The notes under the pieces were generated by a model that was given only the letters and a program-made list of their open reading frames with translations, did not search any database and had not been told where the DNA came from. 64,000 nt of DNA, taken from the sequence record KT919973.1; one strand, given 5' to 3'. The position numbers and the translations under genes are program-made. Of this stretch, positions 1 through 63,001 are shown piece by piece (position 1 is the first letter of the stretch; each line of letters begins with the position of its first letter).

Positions 1-2313
1 GACGACCCAGAGCAAGGTCTCGATTATCAAGACGGAAATATGTTCGCGCTAGTCATAGGTGAGTGGGAGCATGACGAGAACGGTAAACGAATCGGTACAT
101 CTGACCCGAATGAGATTCGCGGTGTTTATCGACTAAATCGCACAGCGACATTGAGAGATGGTATCGTTATTGGTTACACTGGCTTGACATGGGAACGTGT
201 ATACGGAAACATTGAAGAAGAACGCGAACTTCTAAACGAACGTTCAGTTATTTCACGTGACAACACTCATTTGATTGTAGGTCACGATCTAACAAAGAAC
301 TACGGTGAAGAAGGCAACCCAGCTTACGACAATCGTCAAGAGTCTAGCGGTGCACCTGGTAATTTCCACTCAACTGCGGGTGATAACTACGGTACAATAG
401 ATGACCCGTATCTAGTTTCAGACAACGATGAAGTTGACGAAGCTGTTCGTATGTTCACTAAACCGTTCTTTACAACATACGTTAAGCCGATGACACAGAT
501 TATCGCGACGAAAGACGGCGATGATTGGTACTACAAGCCGCAAGATTATTACGGATCCGCGCATTTCAACTGGATGCAGCGTGCTGAAACACGTGATTGG
601 AAATCTTGGGCAAATGAAATCATGTACTACAAGAAAGAGTCAATTTTCAGAAGCGAATTTGAAGATCTAGACGAATATAAATGGAAAGAGACATTCGACG
701 AAGGTGAATACAAACTGGAAGCTCCTAATCTATCGATTTTCGGGTTTAATGGTTATGCAGCAGGTGCGATCATTCACAGCGCGAACGACAACAAGGTAAT
801 AGGTTACTACAAGTTTCCATACCGCGTTGATATCACAGCGCCAATTCGCTGGTCGCCTGAGCGTCGTGTAATCACGGCTAGTTTGTCTAATTATTCTCCA
901 GTAATTATCGAGCCGCCTGAAGAAGACCCAACAAGTATGCTCGACCCGACTCTGACACCATTGATTTACAAGATGATGCCAGAGAATTATCTCGATGCAG
1001 ACGGGTTTTACAAGAGTTTTGCAAAGCACTACTTAGATTTCATCAGTAAAGGTGATGGTACGGCTTATAATAACGTGTATAACTTGCTTAACAGCAAAAA
1101 CCCACTTGACGACCATTACACTGAGTATCTACACAAATTAGTATACGAGCGAAATCGTATTCTAGAGCCAGAGAAACGTGATGCAGTTGTTAAATTTTTC
1201 TTGGCACGACGTGCAGATTTTTACAGCACTAAAGGTATTTTAGACTCATACAAGTTCTTGTTCAAGTTACTGTACAACGAAGATGTTGAAGTTGAAATAG
1301 AATCGCTTAACACGTTTGAATATTCAATCGTTGTTAACTCAAATGACGTAACCGATGATGTGGTAGGTCGTAGAATTTATTCAGAGACAGGCAACGCAGA
1401 CGTGACATATGTTGACCGTCATTACATTGAAGGTAAACGTTACTGGAAATTGACTTTGAACAACTTAATCGGTGAGTTGAACATCGGCGACACGTTAGAA
1501 ATCGACGGTCTGGAATTCACTGCAACTGCGATTACTCGCGTACAAGGTGAACGAATCGACTACGATTCAAATGAATTTCTTGATCGAAGCAAATCATACT
1601 ACGTTATGAAGATTCGTTCTGAGATTCAGCTTAGTCAGTACAAAGATGATGTAATTCGATTTGTACACCCAATTGGGTTTGGGTTCTTAGGTATTACGTT
1701 GCTGACAGTATTGATCAATCACGGTATCTCAGTCAACCACCACGAAACGATTGTAGATTCATACAGATTGATTCGCTATGACAACGGTATAGGGAATAAC
1801 TTCACTGAAGAAACTTCATTGCTTGATGGTAACGACGATAGAATTTACAACTCGTTCGGTGAACTTCAATTGAAGCCACACCCGTTAGCACTAGAAGACC
1901 CGCTTGACCATGCGATTCAAGATCGATTGACTAATACACAGGGTATTACAATCATCGACTACAACAACTACTGGGCTAATGATCGTGTGATTGCTTTAGA
2001 TGAGTATTCAGCTATCGACGAGCAACGATATATAGAAACAGACACGGGTGATATCAACGATGAATGGGGCGGTAAGAAACGTGTTCTGAATCCCAATTAC
2101 AACCCAACTGCGAAAGTTCAATCAGCAGACGCAAACGGGTCGGTATATTGGGGAATGACAGCATACGAACGAACTCCTGCATTTATGTTTGACTGGTCAG
2201 CAGCATCGACGAGTATTTCAGATATGTACGAAGATTCTGATTACAGATTGAAAGACAACGTTGGCAACCCATATGACCCAGTAACGCCGACTCAAAAACA
2301 AATAGGTGAATAA
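1..2313 (+). CDS. 7: Baseplate wedge subunit gp7 (5'-truncated; frame open from base 1)
   Basis: Directly upstream of gp8; gp7-type C-terminal motifs FYSTKGILDSYKFLFKLLYNEDVEVEIE and FVHPIGFGF; no stop in frame from base 1. Confidence 0.85.
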   Translation, partial: DDPEQGLDYQDGNMFALVIGEWEHDENGKRIGTSDPNEIRGVYRLNRTATLRDGIVIGYTGLTWERVYGNIEEERELLNERSVISRDNTHLIVGHDLTKNYGEEGNPAYDNRQESSGAPGNFHSTAGDNYGTIDDPYLVSDNDEVDEAVRMFTKPFFTTYVKPMTQIIATKDGDDWYYKPQDYYGSAHFNWMQRAETRDWKSWANEIMYYKKESIFRSEFEDLDEYKWKETFDEGEYKLEAPNLSIFGFNGYAAGAIIHSANDNKVIGYYKFPYRVDITAPIRWSPERRVITASLSNYSPVIIEPPEEDPTSMLDPTLTPLIYKMMPENYLDADGFYKSFAKHYLDFISKGDGTAYNNVYNLLNSKNPLDDHYTEYLHKLVYERNRILEPEKRDAVVKFFLARRADFYSTKGILDSYKFLFKLLYNEDVEVEIESLNTFEYSIVVNSNDVTDDVVGRRIYSETGNADVTYVDRHYIEGKRYWKLTLNNLIGELNIGDTLEIDGLEFTATAITRVQGERIDYDSNEFLDRSKSYYVMKIRSEIQLSQYKDDVIRFVHPIGFGFLGITLLTVLINHGISVNHHETIVDSYRLIRYDNGIGNNFTEETSLLDGNDDRIYNSFGELQLKPHPLALEDPLDHAIQDRLTNTQGITIIDYNNYWANDRVIALDEYSAIDEQRYIETDTGDINDEWGGKKRVLNPNYNPTAKVQSADANGSVYWGMTAYERTPAFMFDWSAASTSISDMYEDSDYRLKDNVGNPYDPVTPTQKQIGE

Positions 2314-60025: not shown

Positions 60026-60163
60026 ATGACAACGAATCGCTTAGATTGGACAATCGAAAAGAAAGCTCAGTTCATCGCGACATACAAAGACGGTACGGTT
60101 TTAGTTGCTCGTACTCGCGAAGAGCTTAATTCGCAAATCAATGAGTTTGAAAAAACGTTATGA
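60026..60163 (+). CDS. Hypothetical 45-aa protein
   Basis: ATG 60026 after AGAG SD, downstream of the promoter. Confidence 0.6.
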   Translation: MTTNRLDWTIEKKAQFIATYKDGTVLVARTREELNSQINEFEKTL

Positions 60164-60558
60164 ATTTGCATTCGTTCATGTACAAATGGAAAAGATTTTC
60201 ATTTGAATTCAACAATTACGCGATTGAGAAGCAGCGTGGCTTAGTCGGGACTGTTGACTTTGTGATGAAGAAACACTTCACACATCGAGTATATGACCGA
60301 TTCTGTGCTGCTGAACATTCAACATTGCGTAGAATGCTGTATCATACAGTAAACAAGCACTTAGGTGAAGTTCTGTATTGGTATTACAGTGCTGAAAAGC
60401 GTGAGCTTGCTATCAAGCGTGAAGATATTTACATAATATTTGAGAAGGGAATTAAAGGTTGTATTTTGATTACGACGATATATCGTAATGAAAATAAGCA
60501 AAACCATGATAAATTCTTTTTGATTGATATAAGCAGAAAGCAAAATGAAGCAAATTAG
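60160..60558 (+). CDS. Hypothetical protein, possible BECR-type RNase fold
   Basis: HFTHRVYDR and terminal ILITTIY strand. Confidence 0.35.
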   Translation: MNLHSFMYKWKRFSFEFNNYAIEKQRGLVGTVDFVMKKHFTHRVYDRFCAAEHSTLRRMLYHTVNKHLGEVLYWYYSAEKRELAIKREDIYIIFEKGIKGCILITTIYRNENKQNHDKFFLIDISRKQNEAN

Positions 60559-60790
60559 ACTTGGTGACTATATCGAGGTCACTGAAAGACTAGACCAAGA
60601 GAGCTTTTTTGGTCAGTTGGTTGATATTGCACCGTGTCTATGGGCACGTGGTGATTTTCTACGACTTGTTGATGACGCAGGTAATGAAGTTCAATTGAAC
60701 ACTGTGAACATCGACATGATTAATGGCACAGTTGTGAGTGAATTAACTAGAAACGCTCATGGCTTTATGTATTGTGAGGAAAAGATTTGA
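60545..60790 (+). CDS. Hypothetical protein
   Basis: 81 aa ORF in a packed operon. Confidence 0.55.
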   Translation: MKQIRLGDYIEVTERLDQESFFGQLVDIAPCLWARGDFLRLVDDAGNEVQLNTVNIDMINGTVVSELTRNAHGFMYCEEKI

Positions 60791-61230
60791 AAGGTTACGT
60801 ATTTGTAAATCGCTATTGTAAAGGTATTCAAGCTGGTATTCAAGGTGCACATGCGCTTCTACGTCTTGCGCGTAAAGCAGATAACCCAGTTTTCAATAAG
60901 TGGCTGAATGATCACGAGACGATTTGTGTTCTGTCAGCGGCTAGTCATGACCATCTTGAAGAAATCGAAGAGACAATTCGTGAAATGGGTGTTGTTGAAG
61001 ACATTACATTTTTTCAAGAAGAAGGTTTACATCACTCACTAACAGGTGTAGCATTCATTGGCGACGACACGCTAATGCAAGTTCAAGCCGAAATGAAAGA
61101 ATGGCGTGAACTGCGTAAGATCGGCGAAGGTCTAAAGCGTCGCGACTTTGATTCAGATATGTTCTACAAATACGGTCGAACATATGAACTTGCAAAATAC
61201 TTAGAGGGGTTTCATTCTCATCATGGATAA
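60787..61230 (+). CDS. Peptidyl-tRNA hydrolase 2 (Pth2)-like protein
   Basis: GIQAGIQGAHA, W...HETICVL, FFQEEGL..SLTGVAF parallel the Pth2 GK.AAQ.AHA / W....KIVL / D.G..T motifs. Confidence 0.55.
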   Translation: MKGYVFVNRYCKGIQAGIQGAHALLRLARKADNPVFNKWLNDHETICVLSAASHDHLEEIEETIREMGVVEDITFFQEEGLHHSLTGVAFIGDDTLMQVQAEMKEWRELRKIGEGLKRRDFDSDMFYKYGRTYELAKYLEGFHSHHG

Positions 61231-61453
61231 CTTAAATCTTAAATTGACTACTGCGACTCGCTTTGAAGAGCTAATGACAAAACCAGGTGTTGATGTTAAA
61301 AATAGCTCTTTTGGTCCTGAATTCATTACGACTGTTTACGAGAACGGTGAATTACTTGCAGAGCGCGTATTGTACGTTTCACAAGCAGAGCACTTTGAAG
61401 TGAAACTACCTGAAACGGCAAAGCAAGCACGCAAAACGAGCAAACTGCCGTAA
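61223..61453 (+). CDS. Hypothetical protein
   Basis: 76 aa ORF overlapping the upstream gene. Confidence 0.55.
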   Translation: MDNLNLKLTTATRFEELMTKPGVDVKNSSFGPEFITTVYENGELLAERVLYVSQAEHFEVKLPETAKQARKTSKLP

Positions 61454-61458
61454 AAACT

Positions 61459-61488
61459 GTTTATTAACTAACTTTGTGAGTGTAATAT
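61459..61488 (+). promoter_or_regulatory. Putative GTTTA-class promoter, probably serving td
   Basis: GTTTAT-N18-TAATAT; the predicted +1 falls just inside the prepilin-like ORF. Confidence 0.45.
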
Positions 61489-61489
61489 T

Positions 61490-61693
61490 ATGAAATCTAA
61501 AGGTTTTACTCTGATCGAATTGATTGTTTTGATTGCGATTCTAGGGATTCTAGCGTCGGTAGCTGCTGGTACGTTGTTTGGGGCTGAACAACCTACATCT
61601 TACAGTACTCAACCGCAATCAGAGACTTATGAAATTGACGGTCAGTTGATGCAATGTACTCCCGTGCAAGCAGTATGGGACGATGATTTTTAA
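61490..61693 (+). CDS. Type IV prepilin-like small protein
   Basis: MKSKG/FTLIELIVLIAILGILASVA: basic leader, G(-1)/F(+1), E(+5), hydrophobic helix. Confidence 0.85.
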   Translation: MKSKGFTLIELIVLIAILGILASVAAGTLFGAEQPTSYSTQPQSETYEIDGQLMQCTPVQAVWDDDF

Positions 61694-61702
61694 AGGTAAT
61701 TG

Positions 61703-62602
61703 ATGAAAAACTACTTGGAACTTTGTAAAGATATTCTAGAAAATGGTGATTTTCTTGAGAATAGAACAGGCACGAATACTGTTAGTGTTGTTTCGCGTGA
61801 GCTTCGATGGGACTTAGAAAAAGGTTTCCCGTTGCTAACGACTAAGAAAATGGCGACAAGAGCTATTTTCGGTGAGTTGCTATGGTTCTTGAGCGGTTCA
61901 GGTTCGATTTCTGAACTGAGAAAATACACTGAATTATCAGACGAAGATTTCTGTATCTGGCAACAAAATCTCGACGAGCTGAACGAGCGTGCGAAAGAAG
62001 CAGGTATTGTTCGCAATGAAGACGACCTTGGTTATGTCTATGGCAAAGTGTGGCGTAAACGTCTATCTGTAAATGCAGAGCGAGAAATTGTTGAGTTTGA
62101 CCAGATTCATCAATTGCTGTGCGATATTGCAGCGGTTAATGAAGACCCGACGCAAAGTGCGCAACGTCGTATGCTTGTTGAAGCATGGGACCCGTACTTC
62201 CATACTGAAAGTAACTCAGTTGACGTAGCTCTACCGCCATGTCATTACGGCTTTCAAGTGTTCGTGCGTAATGGTAAGATCAGCTTGAAATGGAATCAGC
62301 GTTCAGTTGACACATTCTTAGGTCTACCGTTCAATATCGCATCGTATGCTTTGCTAGTGCATATACTAGCTAAATTGACTGGCTTAGGTGTCGGTGAATT
62401 GATTTTCTCTGGTGGTGATGTTCACATTTATGAAGATCATCTAATACAAGTAATGAAGCAAATGAGACGTACGCCGCGTGCGCTACCTCAGATTGAACTT
62501 CCTGAATTTGAAACGTTGTCACAGTTGTTAACTAAACGCGCAAGTGATTTTCGCGTATATGACTATGACCCATACCCAACCCTAAAAGGTAAAATGTCGT
62601 GA
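61703..62602 (+). CDS. td: Thymidylate synthase (ThyA type), intron-less
   Basis: NRTGTNT, FPLLTTKK, ELLWFLSG, LGYVYG, ALPPCH, QRSVDTFLGLPFNIASY, GDVHIYEDH. Confidence 0.97.
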   Translation: MKNYLELCKDILENGDFLENRTGTNTVSVVSRELRWDLEKGFPLLTTKKMATRAIFGELLWFLSGSGSISELRKYTELSDEDFCIWQQNLDELNERAKEAGIVRNEDDLGYVYGKVWRKRLSVNAEREIVEFDQIHQLLCDIAAVNEDPTQSAQRRMLVEAWDPYFHTESNSVDVALPPCHYGFQVFVRNGKISLKWNQRSVDTFLGLPFNIASYALLVHILAKLTGLGVGELIFSGGDVHIYEDHLIQVMKQMRRTPRALPQIELPEFETLSQLLTKRASDFRVYDYDPYPTLKGKMS

Positions 62603-62793
62603 TTAGTAAAACAGATTATTTTGAACTGAAAACAGGTACGCCGATCATTGTAATTGAGCGAATTGACACAATCGACGGTGAGCTTATCAAACTTCCGTAC
62701 AGCAAAGTTGTTGCAGCTAACGACCCGCTCATCGGCGATTCGCTAACTGACGGCAAGATTCACTATCTTTTTGACTTTGAAATTGGTGAGTAA
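62599..62793 (+). CDS. Hypothetical protein
   Basis: 64 aa, GTGA overlap with td. Confidence 0.5.
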   Translation: MISKTDYFELKTGTPIIVIERIDTIDGELIKLPYSKVVAANDPLIGDSLTDGKIHYLFDFEIGE

Positions 62794-62794
62794 C

Positions 62795-63001
62795 ATGAAC
62801 TTAGGTGAGTTCGTAACGGGGTTGTTGACATTGATTGCGTTCGGTATCGTCGCAATGTTGGTTATTCTCGGATTGTCAGTTGGCGGGCTTATCTTCGGTG
62901 CATGGCTCATCATTTCGGGTCATACAGTCGCTGGGTGGGTTGTATTGTTCATCTCGGCGATTGTTTTCGCTTTAATAGGCACAATAATGAGGAATTTGTA
63001 A
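62795..63001 (+). CDS. Small membrane protein (two TM segments)
   Basis: Almost entirely hydrophobic; ATG 62795. Confidence 0.65.
   Translation: MNLGEFVTGLLTLIAFGIVAMLVILGLSVGGLIFGAWLIISGHTVAGWVVLFISAIVFALIGTIMRNL

What the first reader, a model, noticed from the sequence alone, without database searches (positions are those of the whole stretch)
61490..61693. Phage-encoded miniature type IV prepilin (pilin mimic)
The 67-aa ORF has a canonical class III signal (MKSKG/FTLIEL, Glu+5, 20-residue hydrophobic helix) followed by only about 40 polar residues and a single Cys, with no pilin head. No other pilus genes are in the window. Established: PilD processes such proteins, and vibrios use MSHA, ChiRP and TCP pili and the T2SS pseudopilus, which serve as receptors for other phages and for DNA uptake. 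Inference: a dominant-negative subunit that blocks pilus assembly, for superinfection exclusion of pilus-specific competitors or to alter adhesion or secretion.
Basis: partly seen in the sequence, partly recalled or inferred. Interest (0 to 1): 0.7.

Follow-up and report, generated by a model that had tools for sequence, protein, structure and literature searches.

The report
Phage mini-prepilin without a head domain
A T4-like Vibrio phage carries a conserved 67-residue gene that has a pilin's export and cleavage signal and membrane helix but no head domain; it probably tampers with the host's pilus or secretion machinery early in infection, but this kind of gene has been noted before and its function is untested.

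Summary
The ORF at 61490..61693 (+) is real. The window is a KVP40-like T4-type vibriophage, 100% identical to VH7D and phi-ST2 over the 2.5 kb region compared. The 67-aa product passes the curated thresholds of both prepilin N-terminal models. AlphaFold predicts one helix and one beta-hairpin, and there is a single Cys and no pilin head. It is the only such ORF in the window and in the VH7D genome.

It is a core gene of Vibrio T4-like phages. It always lies just upstream of thymidylate synthase, in the replication and nucleotide-metabolism cluster, and is under purifying selection. The cleavage motif and a C-terminal motif ending in Cys-Thr are invariant. No bacterial full-length homologue was found. 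The N-terminus is closest to MSHA-type major pilins and to GspG/GspH.

It is not new as an observation. KVP40.0030 carried a pilin Pfam note in the KVP40 record, and a 2026 paper described truncated PilA-like proteins in virulent phages with the same untested idea.

Best reading (0.4): a host-peptidase-processed minimal pilin that perturbs type IVa pilus or T2SS assembly. The dominant-negative and exclusion function is plausible but unproven.

The parts
61490..61693 (+). Mini-prepilin gene (67 codons plus stop). Ortholog of KVP40.0030, VH7D CF80_gp250, nt-1 ORF295, QD01_029 and F86 VPHF86_0060. PHROG 13280.
61490..61504 (+). Leader peptide MKSKG: short, basic, ending in Gly(-1). This is the type IVa/T2SS-class prepilin leader. 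K4 and G5 are invariant in all relatives aligned.
   Evidence: Pfam and TIGR02532 matches start here
61505..61579 (+). Mature N-terminal hydrophobic helix (residues 6-30), starting F-T-L-I-E. F6, T7, L8, E10 (mature Glu5) and G19 (mature Gly14) are invariant. It is predicted as one continuous helix and is the membrane anchor and subunit-packing segment of pilins.
   Evidence: helix 8-29/30; invariant columns; aligns to alpha1-N of Geobacter PilA-N, Vibrio MshA, PilA and GspG
61580..61621 (+). Variable polar Ser/Thr/Gln/Pro-rich linker (residues 31-44), low model confidence, predicted periplasmic.
61622..61663 (+). Conserved beta-hairpin module (residues 45-58) with the family-specific motif E-x-[DN]-G-x3-Q-C-T-P. 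Within the Vibrio-phage set, E48, G51, Q55, C56, T57 and P58 are invariant. Across the wider set with two metagenomic relatives, G51, C56 and T57 are invariant. It holds the single Cys.
   Evidence: conservation; strands 45-49 and 52-56; module found only in this family
61664..61690 (+). C-terminal tail (residues 59-67) ending in an acidic D-D-D-F. It is present in the VH7D/KVP40 group, the 6E35 group and metagenomic P0010, and absent in nt-1, CZ01, VS2, QD01 and F86.
61223..61453 (+). Conserved upstream neighbour (76 aa, KVP40.0029-like, PHROG 14360, no family or structure match). It keeps its place directly before the mini-prepilin in every Vibrio-phage locus with an annotation table or ORF list, and a relative does so in a distant uncultured T4-like phage, where the two ORFs overlap. 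It may be co-expressed; whether it functions with the mini-prepilin is unknown.

Best explanation
The gene encodes a minimal type IV prepilin-class protein that the phage makes before or during DNA replication.

Proposed mechanism, all steps inferred:
1. The protein inserts into the host inner membrane, N-terminus in and C-terminus out.
2. The host prepilin peptidase (PilD/VcpD) removes the 5-residue leader and methylates Phe1.
3. The 62-residue product joins the membrane pool of pilin subunits that feeds type IVa pilus machines (MSHA-type, or ChiRP/competence) and/or the T2SS pseudopilus.
4. It has the packing helix with Glu5 and Gly14 but only a beta-hairpin in place of the head. It would therefore dock like a subunit and disturb filament growth, by poisoning, capping or diluting normal subunits.
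5. The likely result is that the infected cell's pili or secretion are altered or shut down. The most plausible benefit is exclusion of pilus-dependent competitor phages or DNA.

Shown here: the sequence class, the architecture, conservation, selection, synteny and restriction to phages. Not shown: processing, target and phenotype.
For: Class III signal:
- It scores above the curated thresholds of two independent models.
- The invariant residues are the ones that matter for cleavage and pilin packing. K4, G5, F6, T7, L8, E10 and G19 are unchanged in relatives down to 44-52% identity, while the rest of the helix varies conservatively. A charged Glu kept inside a membrane helix is hard to explain for a plain anchor or a Sec signal.

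Selection and distribution:
- Purifying selection. Most informative pairwise comparisons give dN/dS of 0.06-0.49 for the whole gene, 0.03-0.40 for the N-terminal half and 0.09-0.86 for the C-terminal half. Some pairs were saturated at synonymous sites.
- The gene is present in all 28 KVP40/nt-1-type genomes that hold the region, and in the more distant F86 and 6E35 groups. It is always directly upstream of td.
- It sits in a one-strand replication and nucleotide-metabolism cluster: rnh, gp32, gp41, gp61, dut, dexA, td, MazG, topoisomerase.
- No T4-type late-promoter consensus occurs within 16 kb. All six in the window lie at 10.5-45.4 kb.

Origin:
- No bacterial full-length homologue was found. 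The 20 best bacterial hits inspected are full-size pilins of 114-188 aa that share only the N-terminus.
- The C-terminal module was found only in this family.

Which host system:
- The N-terminus is closest to MshA (PDB 9lab, 36.7 bits), then PilA 9laa (33.0), then GspG 5wda (29.7).
- The first 25 residues are 72-88% identical to MshA homologues of Photobacterium and Colwellia.
- The best NCBIfam named-family (equivalog) partial hits are GspG and GspH.

Precedent:
- Prophage FimU proteins enter the P. aeruginosa pilus and block tip-binding phages. The same paper reports truncated, roughly 60-residue PilA-like proteins in virulent phages (PMC12952977).
- Pilin stoichiometry tunes pilus dynamics in V. 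cholerae (PMC13249403).
- Similar mini-prepilins with an x-[IL]-[DN]-G-x4-C hairpin occur on an uncultured T4-like phage contig, on a contig carrying a T7-type RNA polymerase, and on contigs beside NAD-salvage genes that are probably phage.
Against: - There are no expression, processing or phenotype data for this gene or any ortholog. No KVP40-type transcriptome or functional study was found.
- The structure models have modest confidence (pLDDT about 66, pTM about 0.3). Fold searches found nothing.
- My own knowledge, not tested here: KVP40-type phages use OmpK rather than pili, so self-exclusion is not explained.
- In a lytic cycle of tens of minutes, blocking new pilus assembly may matter little unless pili turn over quickly.
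- Small pilins can assemble, so 'no head' does not prove 'poison'. Geobacter PilA-N is the top solved match. Flp/Tad pilins are another example, from my own knowledge.
- The MSHA-over-T2SS ranking rests on a few bits. The retrieval pattern forced the leader sequence, and no complete host pilin set could be compared.
Confidence: 0.4

Rival explanations
1. Inner-membrane-anchored periplasmic effector unrelated to pili. The class III signal serves only to place a roughly 40-residue hairpin-plus-Cys peptide on the periplasmic face. There it would bind something else, for example an incoming phage's tail tip or DNA-entry route (as T4 Imm and Sp do) or a lysis-timing component.
For: The C-terminal hairpin motif with its invariant Cys is as conserved as the signal and is unique to the family, so it probably has a binding role of its own. 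The gene lies in the early hyperplastic region near gp61 and dexA. From my own knowledge, that is where T4 keeps sp. Another small membrane ORF sits two genes downstream.
Against: It does not explain the strict invariance of G-F-T-L-I-E and Gly14, which a generic anchor does not need. There is no similarity to any Imm, Sp or defence family. Other phage mini-prepilins share the signal but have unrelated tails, which suggests the signal itself is the common functional element.
Confidence: 0.2
2. Functional minimal pilin. The host machinery polymerises it, alone or mixed with host pilins, into a filament or pseudopilus that replaces or re-coats the host structure. The result would be a changed surface (receptor masking, altered adhesion) rather than loss of pili.
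For: Prophage FimU is incorporated without loss of pilus function (PMC12952977). An archaeal virus's pilins become the dominant host filaments (PMC12426801). The best solved matches are the 61-residue Geobacter PilA-N, which does assemble. Glu5 and Gly14 are conserved.
Against: PilA-N assembles with a partner, PilA-C (my own knowledge, not tested here). No such partner is adjacent here: the upstream ORF has no family or structure match and no class III signal, and the downstream gene is td. Time is short in a lytic cycle. The single Cys cannot form the usual intramolecular disulphide.
Confidence: 0.15
3. Peptidase decoy. Made in quantity early, it saturates or occupies the host prepilin peptidase, so that all host pilins and pseudopilins stay unprocessed.
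For: The cleavage motif is the most conserved part of the protein. A very small substrate is cheap to overproduce.
Against: It does not explain the conserved Gly14 or the conserved C-terminal hairpin and Cys. There are no abundance data. Prepilin peptidases are efficient enzymes (my own knowledge), so titration seems costly.
Confidence: 0.1
4. Ordinary Sec signal peptide. The N-terminal 26 or so residues are cleaved by signal peptidase I after a small-x-small site (V-A-A in this phage), releasing a soluble periplasmic peptide of about 40 residues.
For: The basic n-region, hydrophobic core and small residues near position 24-27 fit a generic signal peptide (sequence).
Against: A Glu in the hydrophobic core is unusual for Sec signals. 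Signal peptides drift freely, yet KGFTLIE is invariant. Both curated prepilin models are passed. The putative small-x-small site is not conserved; F86 and 6E35 differ there.
Confidence: 0.07
5. Decaying remnant of a captured host pilin gene with no present function.
For: It looks like the 5' end of an MshA-type pilin gene.
Against: Most informative pairwise dN/dS values are well below 1, while synonymous sites are close to saturated. Length, frame and synteny are conserved across distant phages. The C-terminal motif is conserved and non-pilin. Third-position identity to host genes is only 36-56%.
Confidence: 0.03

Closest known systems
[quoted passage not shown]
   Same: They are encoded by non-temperate phages and consist of about 60 residues: the pilin N-terminal helix only, with no head.
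   Different: Different hosts and phage groups. Sequence relationship could not be tested, because their table is not held and BLAST did not retrieve them. The Vibrio family has its own conserved hairpin and Cys module. Neither has been tested functionally.
Prophage-encoded FimU (P-FimU) of P. aeruginosa F10-like phages (PMC12952977)
   Same: A phage-encoded member of the type IV pilin class that uses host machinery and acts in phage-versus-phage competition.
   Different: P-FimU is a full-length minor pilin with a folded head. It is expressed from a prophage, is incorporated at the pilus tip and leaves pilus function intact. The protein here is headless, belongs to a lytic phage, and scores only 27 bits against the GspH/FimU-type model, whose cut-off is 80.
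Geobacter PilA-N ('Geopilin domain 1', PDB 7tgg, 9egp, 2m7g, 6vk9)
   Same: It is the best solved-structure match (40 and 39.5 bits). It is a naturally truncated pilin of about 61 residues that is essentially the alpha1 helix.
   Different: The alignment covers only the helix (profile positions 3-41). PilA-N is a cellular protein that works with a separately encoded PilA-C partner (my own knowledge). No such partner is next to the phage gene.
MSHA major pilin MshA of Vibrionaceae (PDB 9lab) and T2SS pseudopilins GspG/GspH
   Same: The leader and the first 25 or so residues are 72-88% identical to MshA homologues of Photobacterium and Colwellia. Among the solved Vibrio-type pilins and the pseudopilin GspG in the list, MshA scores highest. 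GspG and GspH are the best NCBIfam named-family (equivalog) partial hits.
   Different: Those proteins are 130-190 aa with a globular domain. The phage protein matches only their N-terminal segment, far below the family cut-offs (27.8 against 88.85 for GspG). The leader identity was partly forced by the search pattern.
Pilins of the archaeal pleolipovirus SNJ2 (PMC12426801)
   Same: Virus-encoded type IV pilins that hijack the host assembly system.
   Different: They belong to an archaeal temperate virus. They are full pilins that form the dominant surface filaments and serve as receptor for another virus, which is a mutualistic rather than an inhibitory role.
Non-pilin phage inhibitors of type IV pili (Tip, Zip, PfsE) and T4 Imm/Sp superinfection-exclusion proteins
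   Same: Small phage proteins that change the cell envelope to exclude other phages.
   Different: None of them is pilin-like. According to the papers read, Tip acts on PilB, Zip through PilZ and PfsE on PilC. No sequence similarity to any of them came back from the Pfam, PHROG or PADLOC searches.

Membership tests
Prepilin-type N-terminal cleavage/methylation domain proteins (type IV pilin-like superfamily; Pfam PF07963, NCBIfam TIGR02532) | Profile match above the curated threshold | tested here: met
   PF07963 30.3 bits against 21.2. TIGR02532 26.6 bits against 16.3; orthologs score 23.5-37.4.
Prepilin-type N-terminal cleavage/methylation domain proteins | Short basic leader ending in Gly(-1), Phe/Met at +1, Glu at +5 | tested here: met
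   MKSKG followed by FTLIE. K4, G5, F6, T7, L8 and E10 are invariant in 9 relatives.
Prepilin-type N-terminal cleavage/methylation domain proteins | Hydrophobic alpha1-N helix of about 20 residues following the cleavage site | tested here: met
   AlphaFold helix 8-29/30 in two runs. The highest confidence in the model is in residues 11-20 (85-89).
Prepilin-type N-terminal cleavage/methylation domain proteins | Actual cleavage and N-methylation by a prepilin peptidase | not testable with these tools
   No proteomic data found. No product named as a peptidase of this kind appears in the VH7D annotation tables read, but hypothetical ORFs were not searched for domains.
Canonical type IV pilins (major or minor) and T2SS pseudopilins | Globular alpha/beta head domain (multi-stranded antiparallel sheet packed on alpha1-C) | tested here: not met
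   Only about 37 residues follow the helix. One beta-hairpin is predicted. GspG scores 27.8 against 88.85, GspH 27.1 against 80, PilA 24.8 against 400 and PpdD 22.3 against 138, all through the N-terminus only.
Canonical type IV pilins | C-terminal disulphide-bonded loop (two Cys) | tested here: not met
   A single Cys (C56), invariant. The metagenomic mini-prepilins P0082, P0135 and P0031 do have two Cys.
Type IVb pilins (TCP/BFP class) and type IVc Flp/Tad pilins | Long leader (IVb), or a Flp-type motif after the Gly (IVc) | tested here: not met
   The leader is 5 residues and the motif is G|FTLIE. The class definitions come from my own knowledge.
Geobacter-type split pilin (PilA-N plus PilA-C) | Adjacent gene for the separate C-terminal head-like partner | tested here: not met
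   The upstream neighbour is a 76-aa protein with no family or structure match and no class III signal. The downstream gene is thymidylate synthase.
Phage 'truncated PilA' proteins of virulent phages (PMC12952977) | Encoded by a non-temperate phage; about 60 residues comprising only the pilin N-terminal helix region | tested here: met
   The phage is a T4-type Schizotequatrovirus; that this type is lytic is my own knowledge. The protein has 67 aa, helix plus hairpin. This is membership by description only. Homology to the published Pseudomonas-phage families could not be tested.
Known anti-phage defence or superinfection-exclusion protein families | Profile match in PADLOC, PHROG or Pfam to such a family | tested here: not met
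   PADLOC gave no hit. PHROG 13280 has 'unknown function', and the only named PHROG hit is 'pilin' (phrog_3433, N-terminus only).

The most novel reading that the evidence does not exclude
The mini-prepilin could be one example of a phage-specific class of 'minimal pilins'. On this reading, T4-like and other phage lineages each evolved or captured such a protein. The class would share a class III signal, one helix and one Cys-bearing hairpin, and would be made early together with a small cytoplasmic partner (KVP40.0029-like). The host type IVa/T2SS machines would take it up to build or cap a phage-specified pseudopilus. That would be a general, previously uncharacterised way for lytic phages to seize the cell's filament and secretion nanomachines, for example by plugging secretins or shutting envelope traffic, rather than a simple receptor-masking trick.
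Probability: 0.12. Interest if true: 0.75.

Novelty: new member of a known kind. Interest (0 to 1): 0.4.

Why it matters
KVP40-like phages are widely isolated and are studied as aquaculture phage-therapy agents. This gene is one of their universally conserved early genes of unknown function.

If it does disable or re-coat MSHA-type pili or the T2SS, it would show that lytic T4-type phages remodel host surface nanomachines with a subunit mimic. That would add a lytic-phage, headless variant to the recently shown prophage FimU mechanism. It would also explain why short class III-signal ORFs recur in unrelated phage genomes.

As it stands, this is a well-defined but untested candidate, and the idea itself is already in the literature.

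Tried and rejected
Searches that led nowhere:
- Foldseek of the model against the PDB and the viral BFVD library: no match with E below 0.07. The model is too small and too uncertain.
- C-terminal-only protein search (residues 28-67): only the family's own members.
- tblastn of a Pseudomonas pilin N-terminus and of metagenomic mini-prepilin P0031 against phage genomes, to recover the published 'truncated PilA' phage families: no match, probably because the hydrophobic N-terminus is masked.
- Supplementary table of PMC12952977: not held.
- Literature searches for KVP40-type transcriptomes, for functional work on this gene, or for dominant-negative truncated pilins in phages: nothing relevant.
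- PADLOC on the gene and six neighbours: nothing, apart from a negligible 2TM hit on ORF 60160..60558.
- PDB search with the upstream partner ORF: nothing.

Ideas considered and rejected:
- A terminator-like hairpin inside the 3' end of the gene is not more stable than shuffled sequence (z about -0.6) and is not kept in distant orthologs. I do not treat it as a feature.
- A promoter-like match at 61464-61491 overlaps the start codon, so it cannot serve this gene.
- Pseudogene or remnant: rejected on selection and conservation.
- Flp/Tad or TCP-type pilin: rejected on leader length and motif.

This happened in no tool call, note or report section. I made the comparison only with tool-derived sequences and profiles.

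Full report
**1. The observation**

The ORF is present exactly as described. It runs from 61490 to 61693 on the + strand, starts with ATG and encodes 67 codons.
- The product starts MKSKG, followed by FTLIE and a hydrophobic stretch.
- It ends with about 40 polar residues that hold a single Cys, C56.
- It passes the curated thresholds of two independent prepilin N-terminal models. Pfam PF07963 scores 30.3 bits against 21.2, E 2.7e-7. NCBIfam TIGR02532 scores 26.6 against 16.3.
- A six-frame motif scan finds no second class III signal ORF in the window, or in the fetched VH7D pieces plus the window. The only other strict regular-expression hit lacks a hydrophobic helix.

**2. What the window is**

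The 2.5 kb region around the gene is 100% identical to Vibrio phages VH7D and phi-ST2. It is about 86% identical to KVP40 and 77% to nt-1. These are T4-type myoviruses of the Straboviridae (Schizotequatrovirus, Mylasvirus).

The gene is the ortholog of KVP40.0030. Other existing labels:
- UniRef names it a prepilin-type N-terminal cleavage/methylation protein.
- The QD01 and 6E35.1a records mention PilE.
- A ValKK3 paper mentions an ORF231 with low homology to pilin PilE, probably this gene (PMC13142089).

So the resemblance to pilins has been on record for a long time. I found no functional work.

**3. Conservation and context**

tblastn finds the protein in 39 phage records, all from Vibrio phages.
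- It is in all 28 records of the KVP40/nt-1 type.
- It is also in the more distant V. crassostreae 6E35 group.
- F86 carries an ortholog as well.

In every locus with an annotation table or ORF list, the gene sits between a conserved 76-aa ORF (KVP40.0029-like) and thymidylate synthase.

The surrounding genes all lie on one strand and form the T4-type replication and nucleotide-metabolism cluster. They include rnh, gp59, gp32, frd, uvsX, gp41, nrdDG, gp61, dut, dexA, a PTH2-like hydrolase, td, MazG, Sir2 and topoisomerase.

All six copies of the T4 late-promoter consensus in the window lie at 10.5-45.4 kb. None lies near the gene. Pre-replicative expression is therefore a reasonable inference, but it has not been measured.

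Alignments give two conserved blocks.
- The first is the cleavage and packing motif. K4, G5, F6, T7, L8, E10 and G19 are invariant down to 44-52% identity.
- The second is a C-terminal motif, E-x-[DN]-G-x3-Q-C-T-P. Across all nine sequences, G51, C56 and T57 are invariant.

Most informative pairwise Nei-Gojobori dN/dS values are 0.06-0.49 for the whole gene, and synonymous sites are often near saturation. The gene is under purifying selection and is not a remnant.

**4. Architecture**

Two AlphaFold runs, with 4 and 9 sequences, agree on helix 8-29/30, a disordered Ser/Thr/Gln-rich linker, and a beta-hairpin at 45-49 and 52-56. Mean pLDDT is about 66.

There is no head domain. Matches to GspG, GspH, PilA, PpdD and ComG models cover only the N-terminus and fall far below the family cut-offs. 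Fold searches were uninformative.

**5. Relatives elsewhere**

An exhaustive profile search of 1.84 billion representative proteins gave 15,801 hits with E up to 0.001. Those I inspected outside the family share only the N-terminus. Full-length relatives are KVP40, 6E35, F86 and one metagenomic T4-like contig.

Looser relatives with a similar x-[IL]-[DN]-G-x4-C hairpin are:
- P0032, in an uncultured T4-like phage. It is again preceded by a KVP40.0029-like ORF (45% identity) and followed by td.
- P0031, on a contig carrying a T7-type RNA polymerase.
- P0082 and P0135, beside NadA, NAD kinase, NMNAT-NUDIX and NAMPT genes. Their NAMPT gene resembles those of T4-like phages, so these contigs are probably phage.

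IMG/VR holds further short class III ORFs with unrelated tails, and PHROG has several such families.

In one-genome-per-species bacterial contigs, 345 relatives were confirmed. The 20 best that I inspected are full-size pilins of 114-188 aa sharing only the N-terminus. A C-terminus-only search found nothing outside the family. The full-length protein was therefore found only in phages.

**6. Which host system does the helix resemble?**

- Against solved structures, the order is Geobacter PilA-N (40.1 and 39.5 bits), MshA 9lab (36.7), PilA 9laa (33.0), GspG 5wda (29.7).
- The Vibrionaceae and Alteromonadales proteins with the most similar N-terminus are full-length MshA homologues, with E about 1e-20 to 9lab. 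The Colwellia protein lies in a cluster of a GspF-like gene plus five pilin genes.
- Identity over the first 25 residues is 72-88%. Third-codon-position identity is only 36-56%, so there is no sign of recent capture.
- NCBIfam ranks GspG and GspH first among named-family (equivalog) partial hits.

This points weakly to MSHA-type pili or the T2SS. The differences are only a few bits, and the retrieval pattern forced the leader sequence.

**7. How it most likely works**

Steps shown:
- The protein belongs to the prepilin class.
- It is headless.
- It is found only in phages.
- It is conserved and under purifying selection.
- It lies in the replication and nucleotide-metabolism cluster.

Steps inferred:
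- The protein is inserted into the inner membrane.
- The host prepilin peptidase cleaves it.
- It enters the pilin pool of type IVa or T2SS machines.
- It disturbs filament assembly.

The invariance of Gly(-1), Phe1, Glu5 and Gly14 argues that cleavage and pilin-type helix packing are both selected. The conserved hairpin and Cys argue for a further specific contact.

I put 0.4 on this reading. About 0.8 of my belief is that it is a genuine peptidase substrate. Within the 0.4, 'poison or cap' is somewhat favoured over harmless dilution.

Rivals:
- Periplasmic effector merely anchored by the signal: 0.2.
- Assembled substitute pilin: 0.15.
- Peptidase decoy: 0.1.
- Sec signal peptide: 0.07.
- Remnant: 0.03.

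**8. Comparison with what is known**

The closest published kind is the group of truncated, roughly 60-residue PilA-like proteins in virulent Pseudomonas phages described by Sztanko et al. They proposed the same two mechanisms and the same rationale of early superinfection exclusion, without testing them (PMC12952977). Their main result shows that phage-encoded pilin-class proteins can work through host machinery: prophage FimU is incorporated at the pilus tip and blocks tip-binding phages. So do the SNJ2 pilins in archaea. Work in V. cholerae shows that pilin stoichiometry tunes pilus dynamics.

The protein here is a member of the prepilin-domain superfamily, since the defining features that could be tested were met. 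It is not a member of any full pilin or pseudopilin family, because the head domain and disulphide tests were not met. By description it belongs with the phage 'truncated pilin' kind. Homology to those families could not be tested.

**9. Novelty and score**

I rate it a new member of a known kind.

New points from this analysis:
- It is a core, syntenic gene of Vibrio T4-like phages.
- It has its own conserved hairpin and Cys module.
- It has a conserved upstream partner ORF.
- It has no bacterial full-length counterpart.
- Its helix is closest to MSHA and T2SS types.

Points already known: the pilin-like annotation and the functional idea.

Interest is 0.4.

**10. Limits and a slip**

There are no expression or processing data. 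The structure models have modest confidence. No complete host pilin set was available.

Noticed in passing
window 61223..61453 (+); L012 5789..6016; L010 1909..2139: The 76-aa ORF upstream (KVP40.0029-like, PHROG 14360, no Pfam or PDB match) keeps its place before the mini-prepilin in every Vibrio-phage locus with an annotation table or ORF list. A 45%-identical relative does so in a distant uncultured T4-like phage. In L012 and L010 the upstream ORF overlaps the mini-prepilin start, which suggests translational coupling. This may be a two-gene module.
   Followed up: partly
window 61664..61690 (residues 59-67): The acidic C-terminal tail ending D-D-D-F is patchy. It is present in the VH7D/KVP40 group, the distant 6E35 group and metagenomic P0010, and absent in nt-1, CZ01, VS2, QD01 and F86. 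Either it was lost repeatedly or it is an optional add-on. No explanation.
   Followed up: no
L012 6222..8099; ValKK3 record (hit H10): In the uncultured T4-like phage the td gene next to the mini-prepilin is split by an insert that encodes a GIY-YIG I-TevI-like endonuclease, like the T4 td intron. ValKK3 has a homing endonuclease inserted in the same 2.5 kb region. This window's td is uninterrupted.
   Followed up: no
window 62771..63001 (+): A small ORF (76 aa), very hydrophobic with apparently two or three membrane-spanning stretches, lies two genes downstream of td. It overlaps the end of the 64-aa ORF 62599..62793, and VH7D annotates a shorter version. It is another small envelope protein in the same early block.
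   Followed up: no
window 60787..61230 (+): The 147-aa 'hydrolase' two genes upstream matches peptidyl-tRNA hydrolase PTH2 (PF01981, 26.1 bits against 23) and PHROG 3668. QD01 annotates it as aminoacyl-tRNA hydrolase.
   Followed up: no
window 10504, 18111, 23626, 24536, 33430, 45401 (+): All six exact copies of the T4 late-promoter consensus TATAAATA are on the + strand and lie within 10.5-45.4 kb. None occurs in the last 18 kb. The count of 6 compares with 2.8 expected from shuffles.
   Followed up: partly
window 1..40; VH7D NC_023568.1 about 92-107 kb and 110-123 kb: The first 40 bases of the window were not found at the expected place in VH7D, although the last 40 bases and the gene map exactly. 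The window may come from a near-identical relative, or the genomes may differ at that end. The VH7D RefSeq record has long stretches with almost no annotated CDS.
   Followed up: no
window 61660..61680 (+): A terminator-like hairpin followed by a T-run lies inside the 3' end of the gene. It is kept in KVP40 and partly in nt-1, but is no more stable than shuffled sequence (z about -0.6).
   Followed up: yes
L014-L019 (metagenomic contigs): Mini-prepilins of 67-68 aa with two Cys sit directly after NadA and NAD kinase and before NMNAT-NUDIX and NAMPT genes. This NAD-salvage block resembles those of T4-like phages, and the NAMPT gene matches Aeromonas and Serratia T4-like phages at 67-69% DNA identity.
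   Followed up: partly
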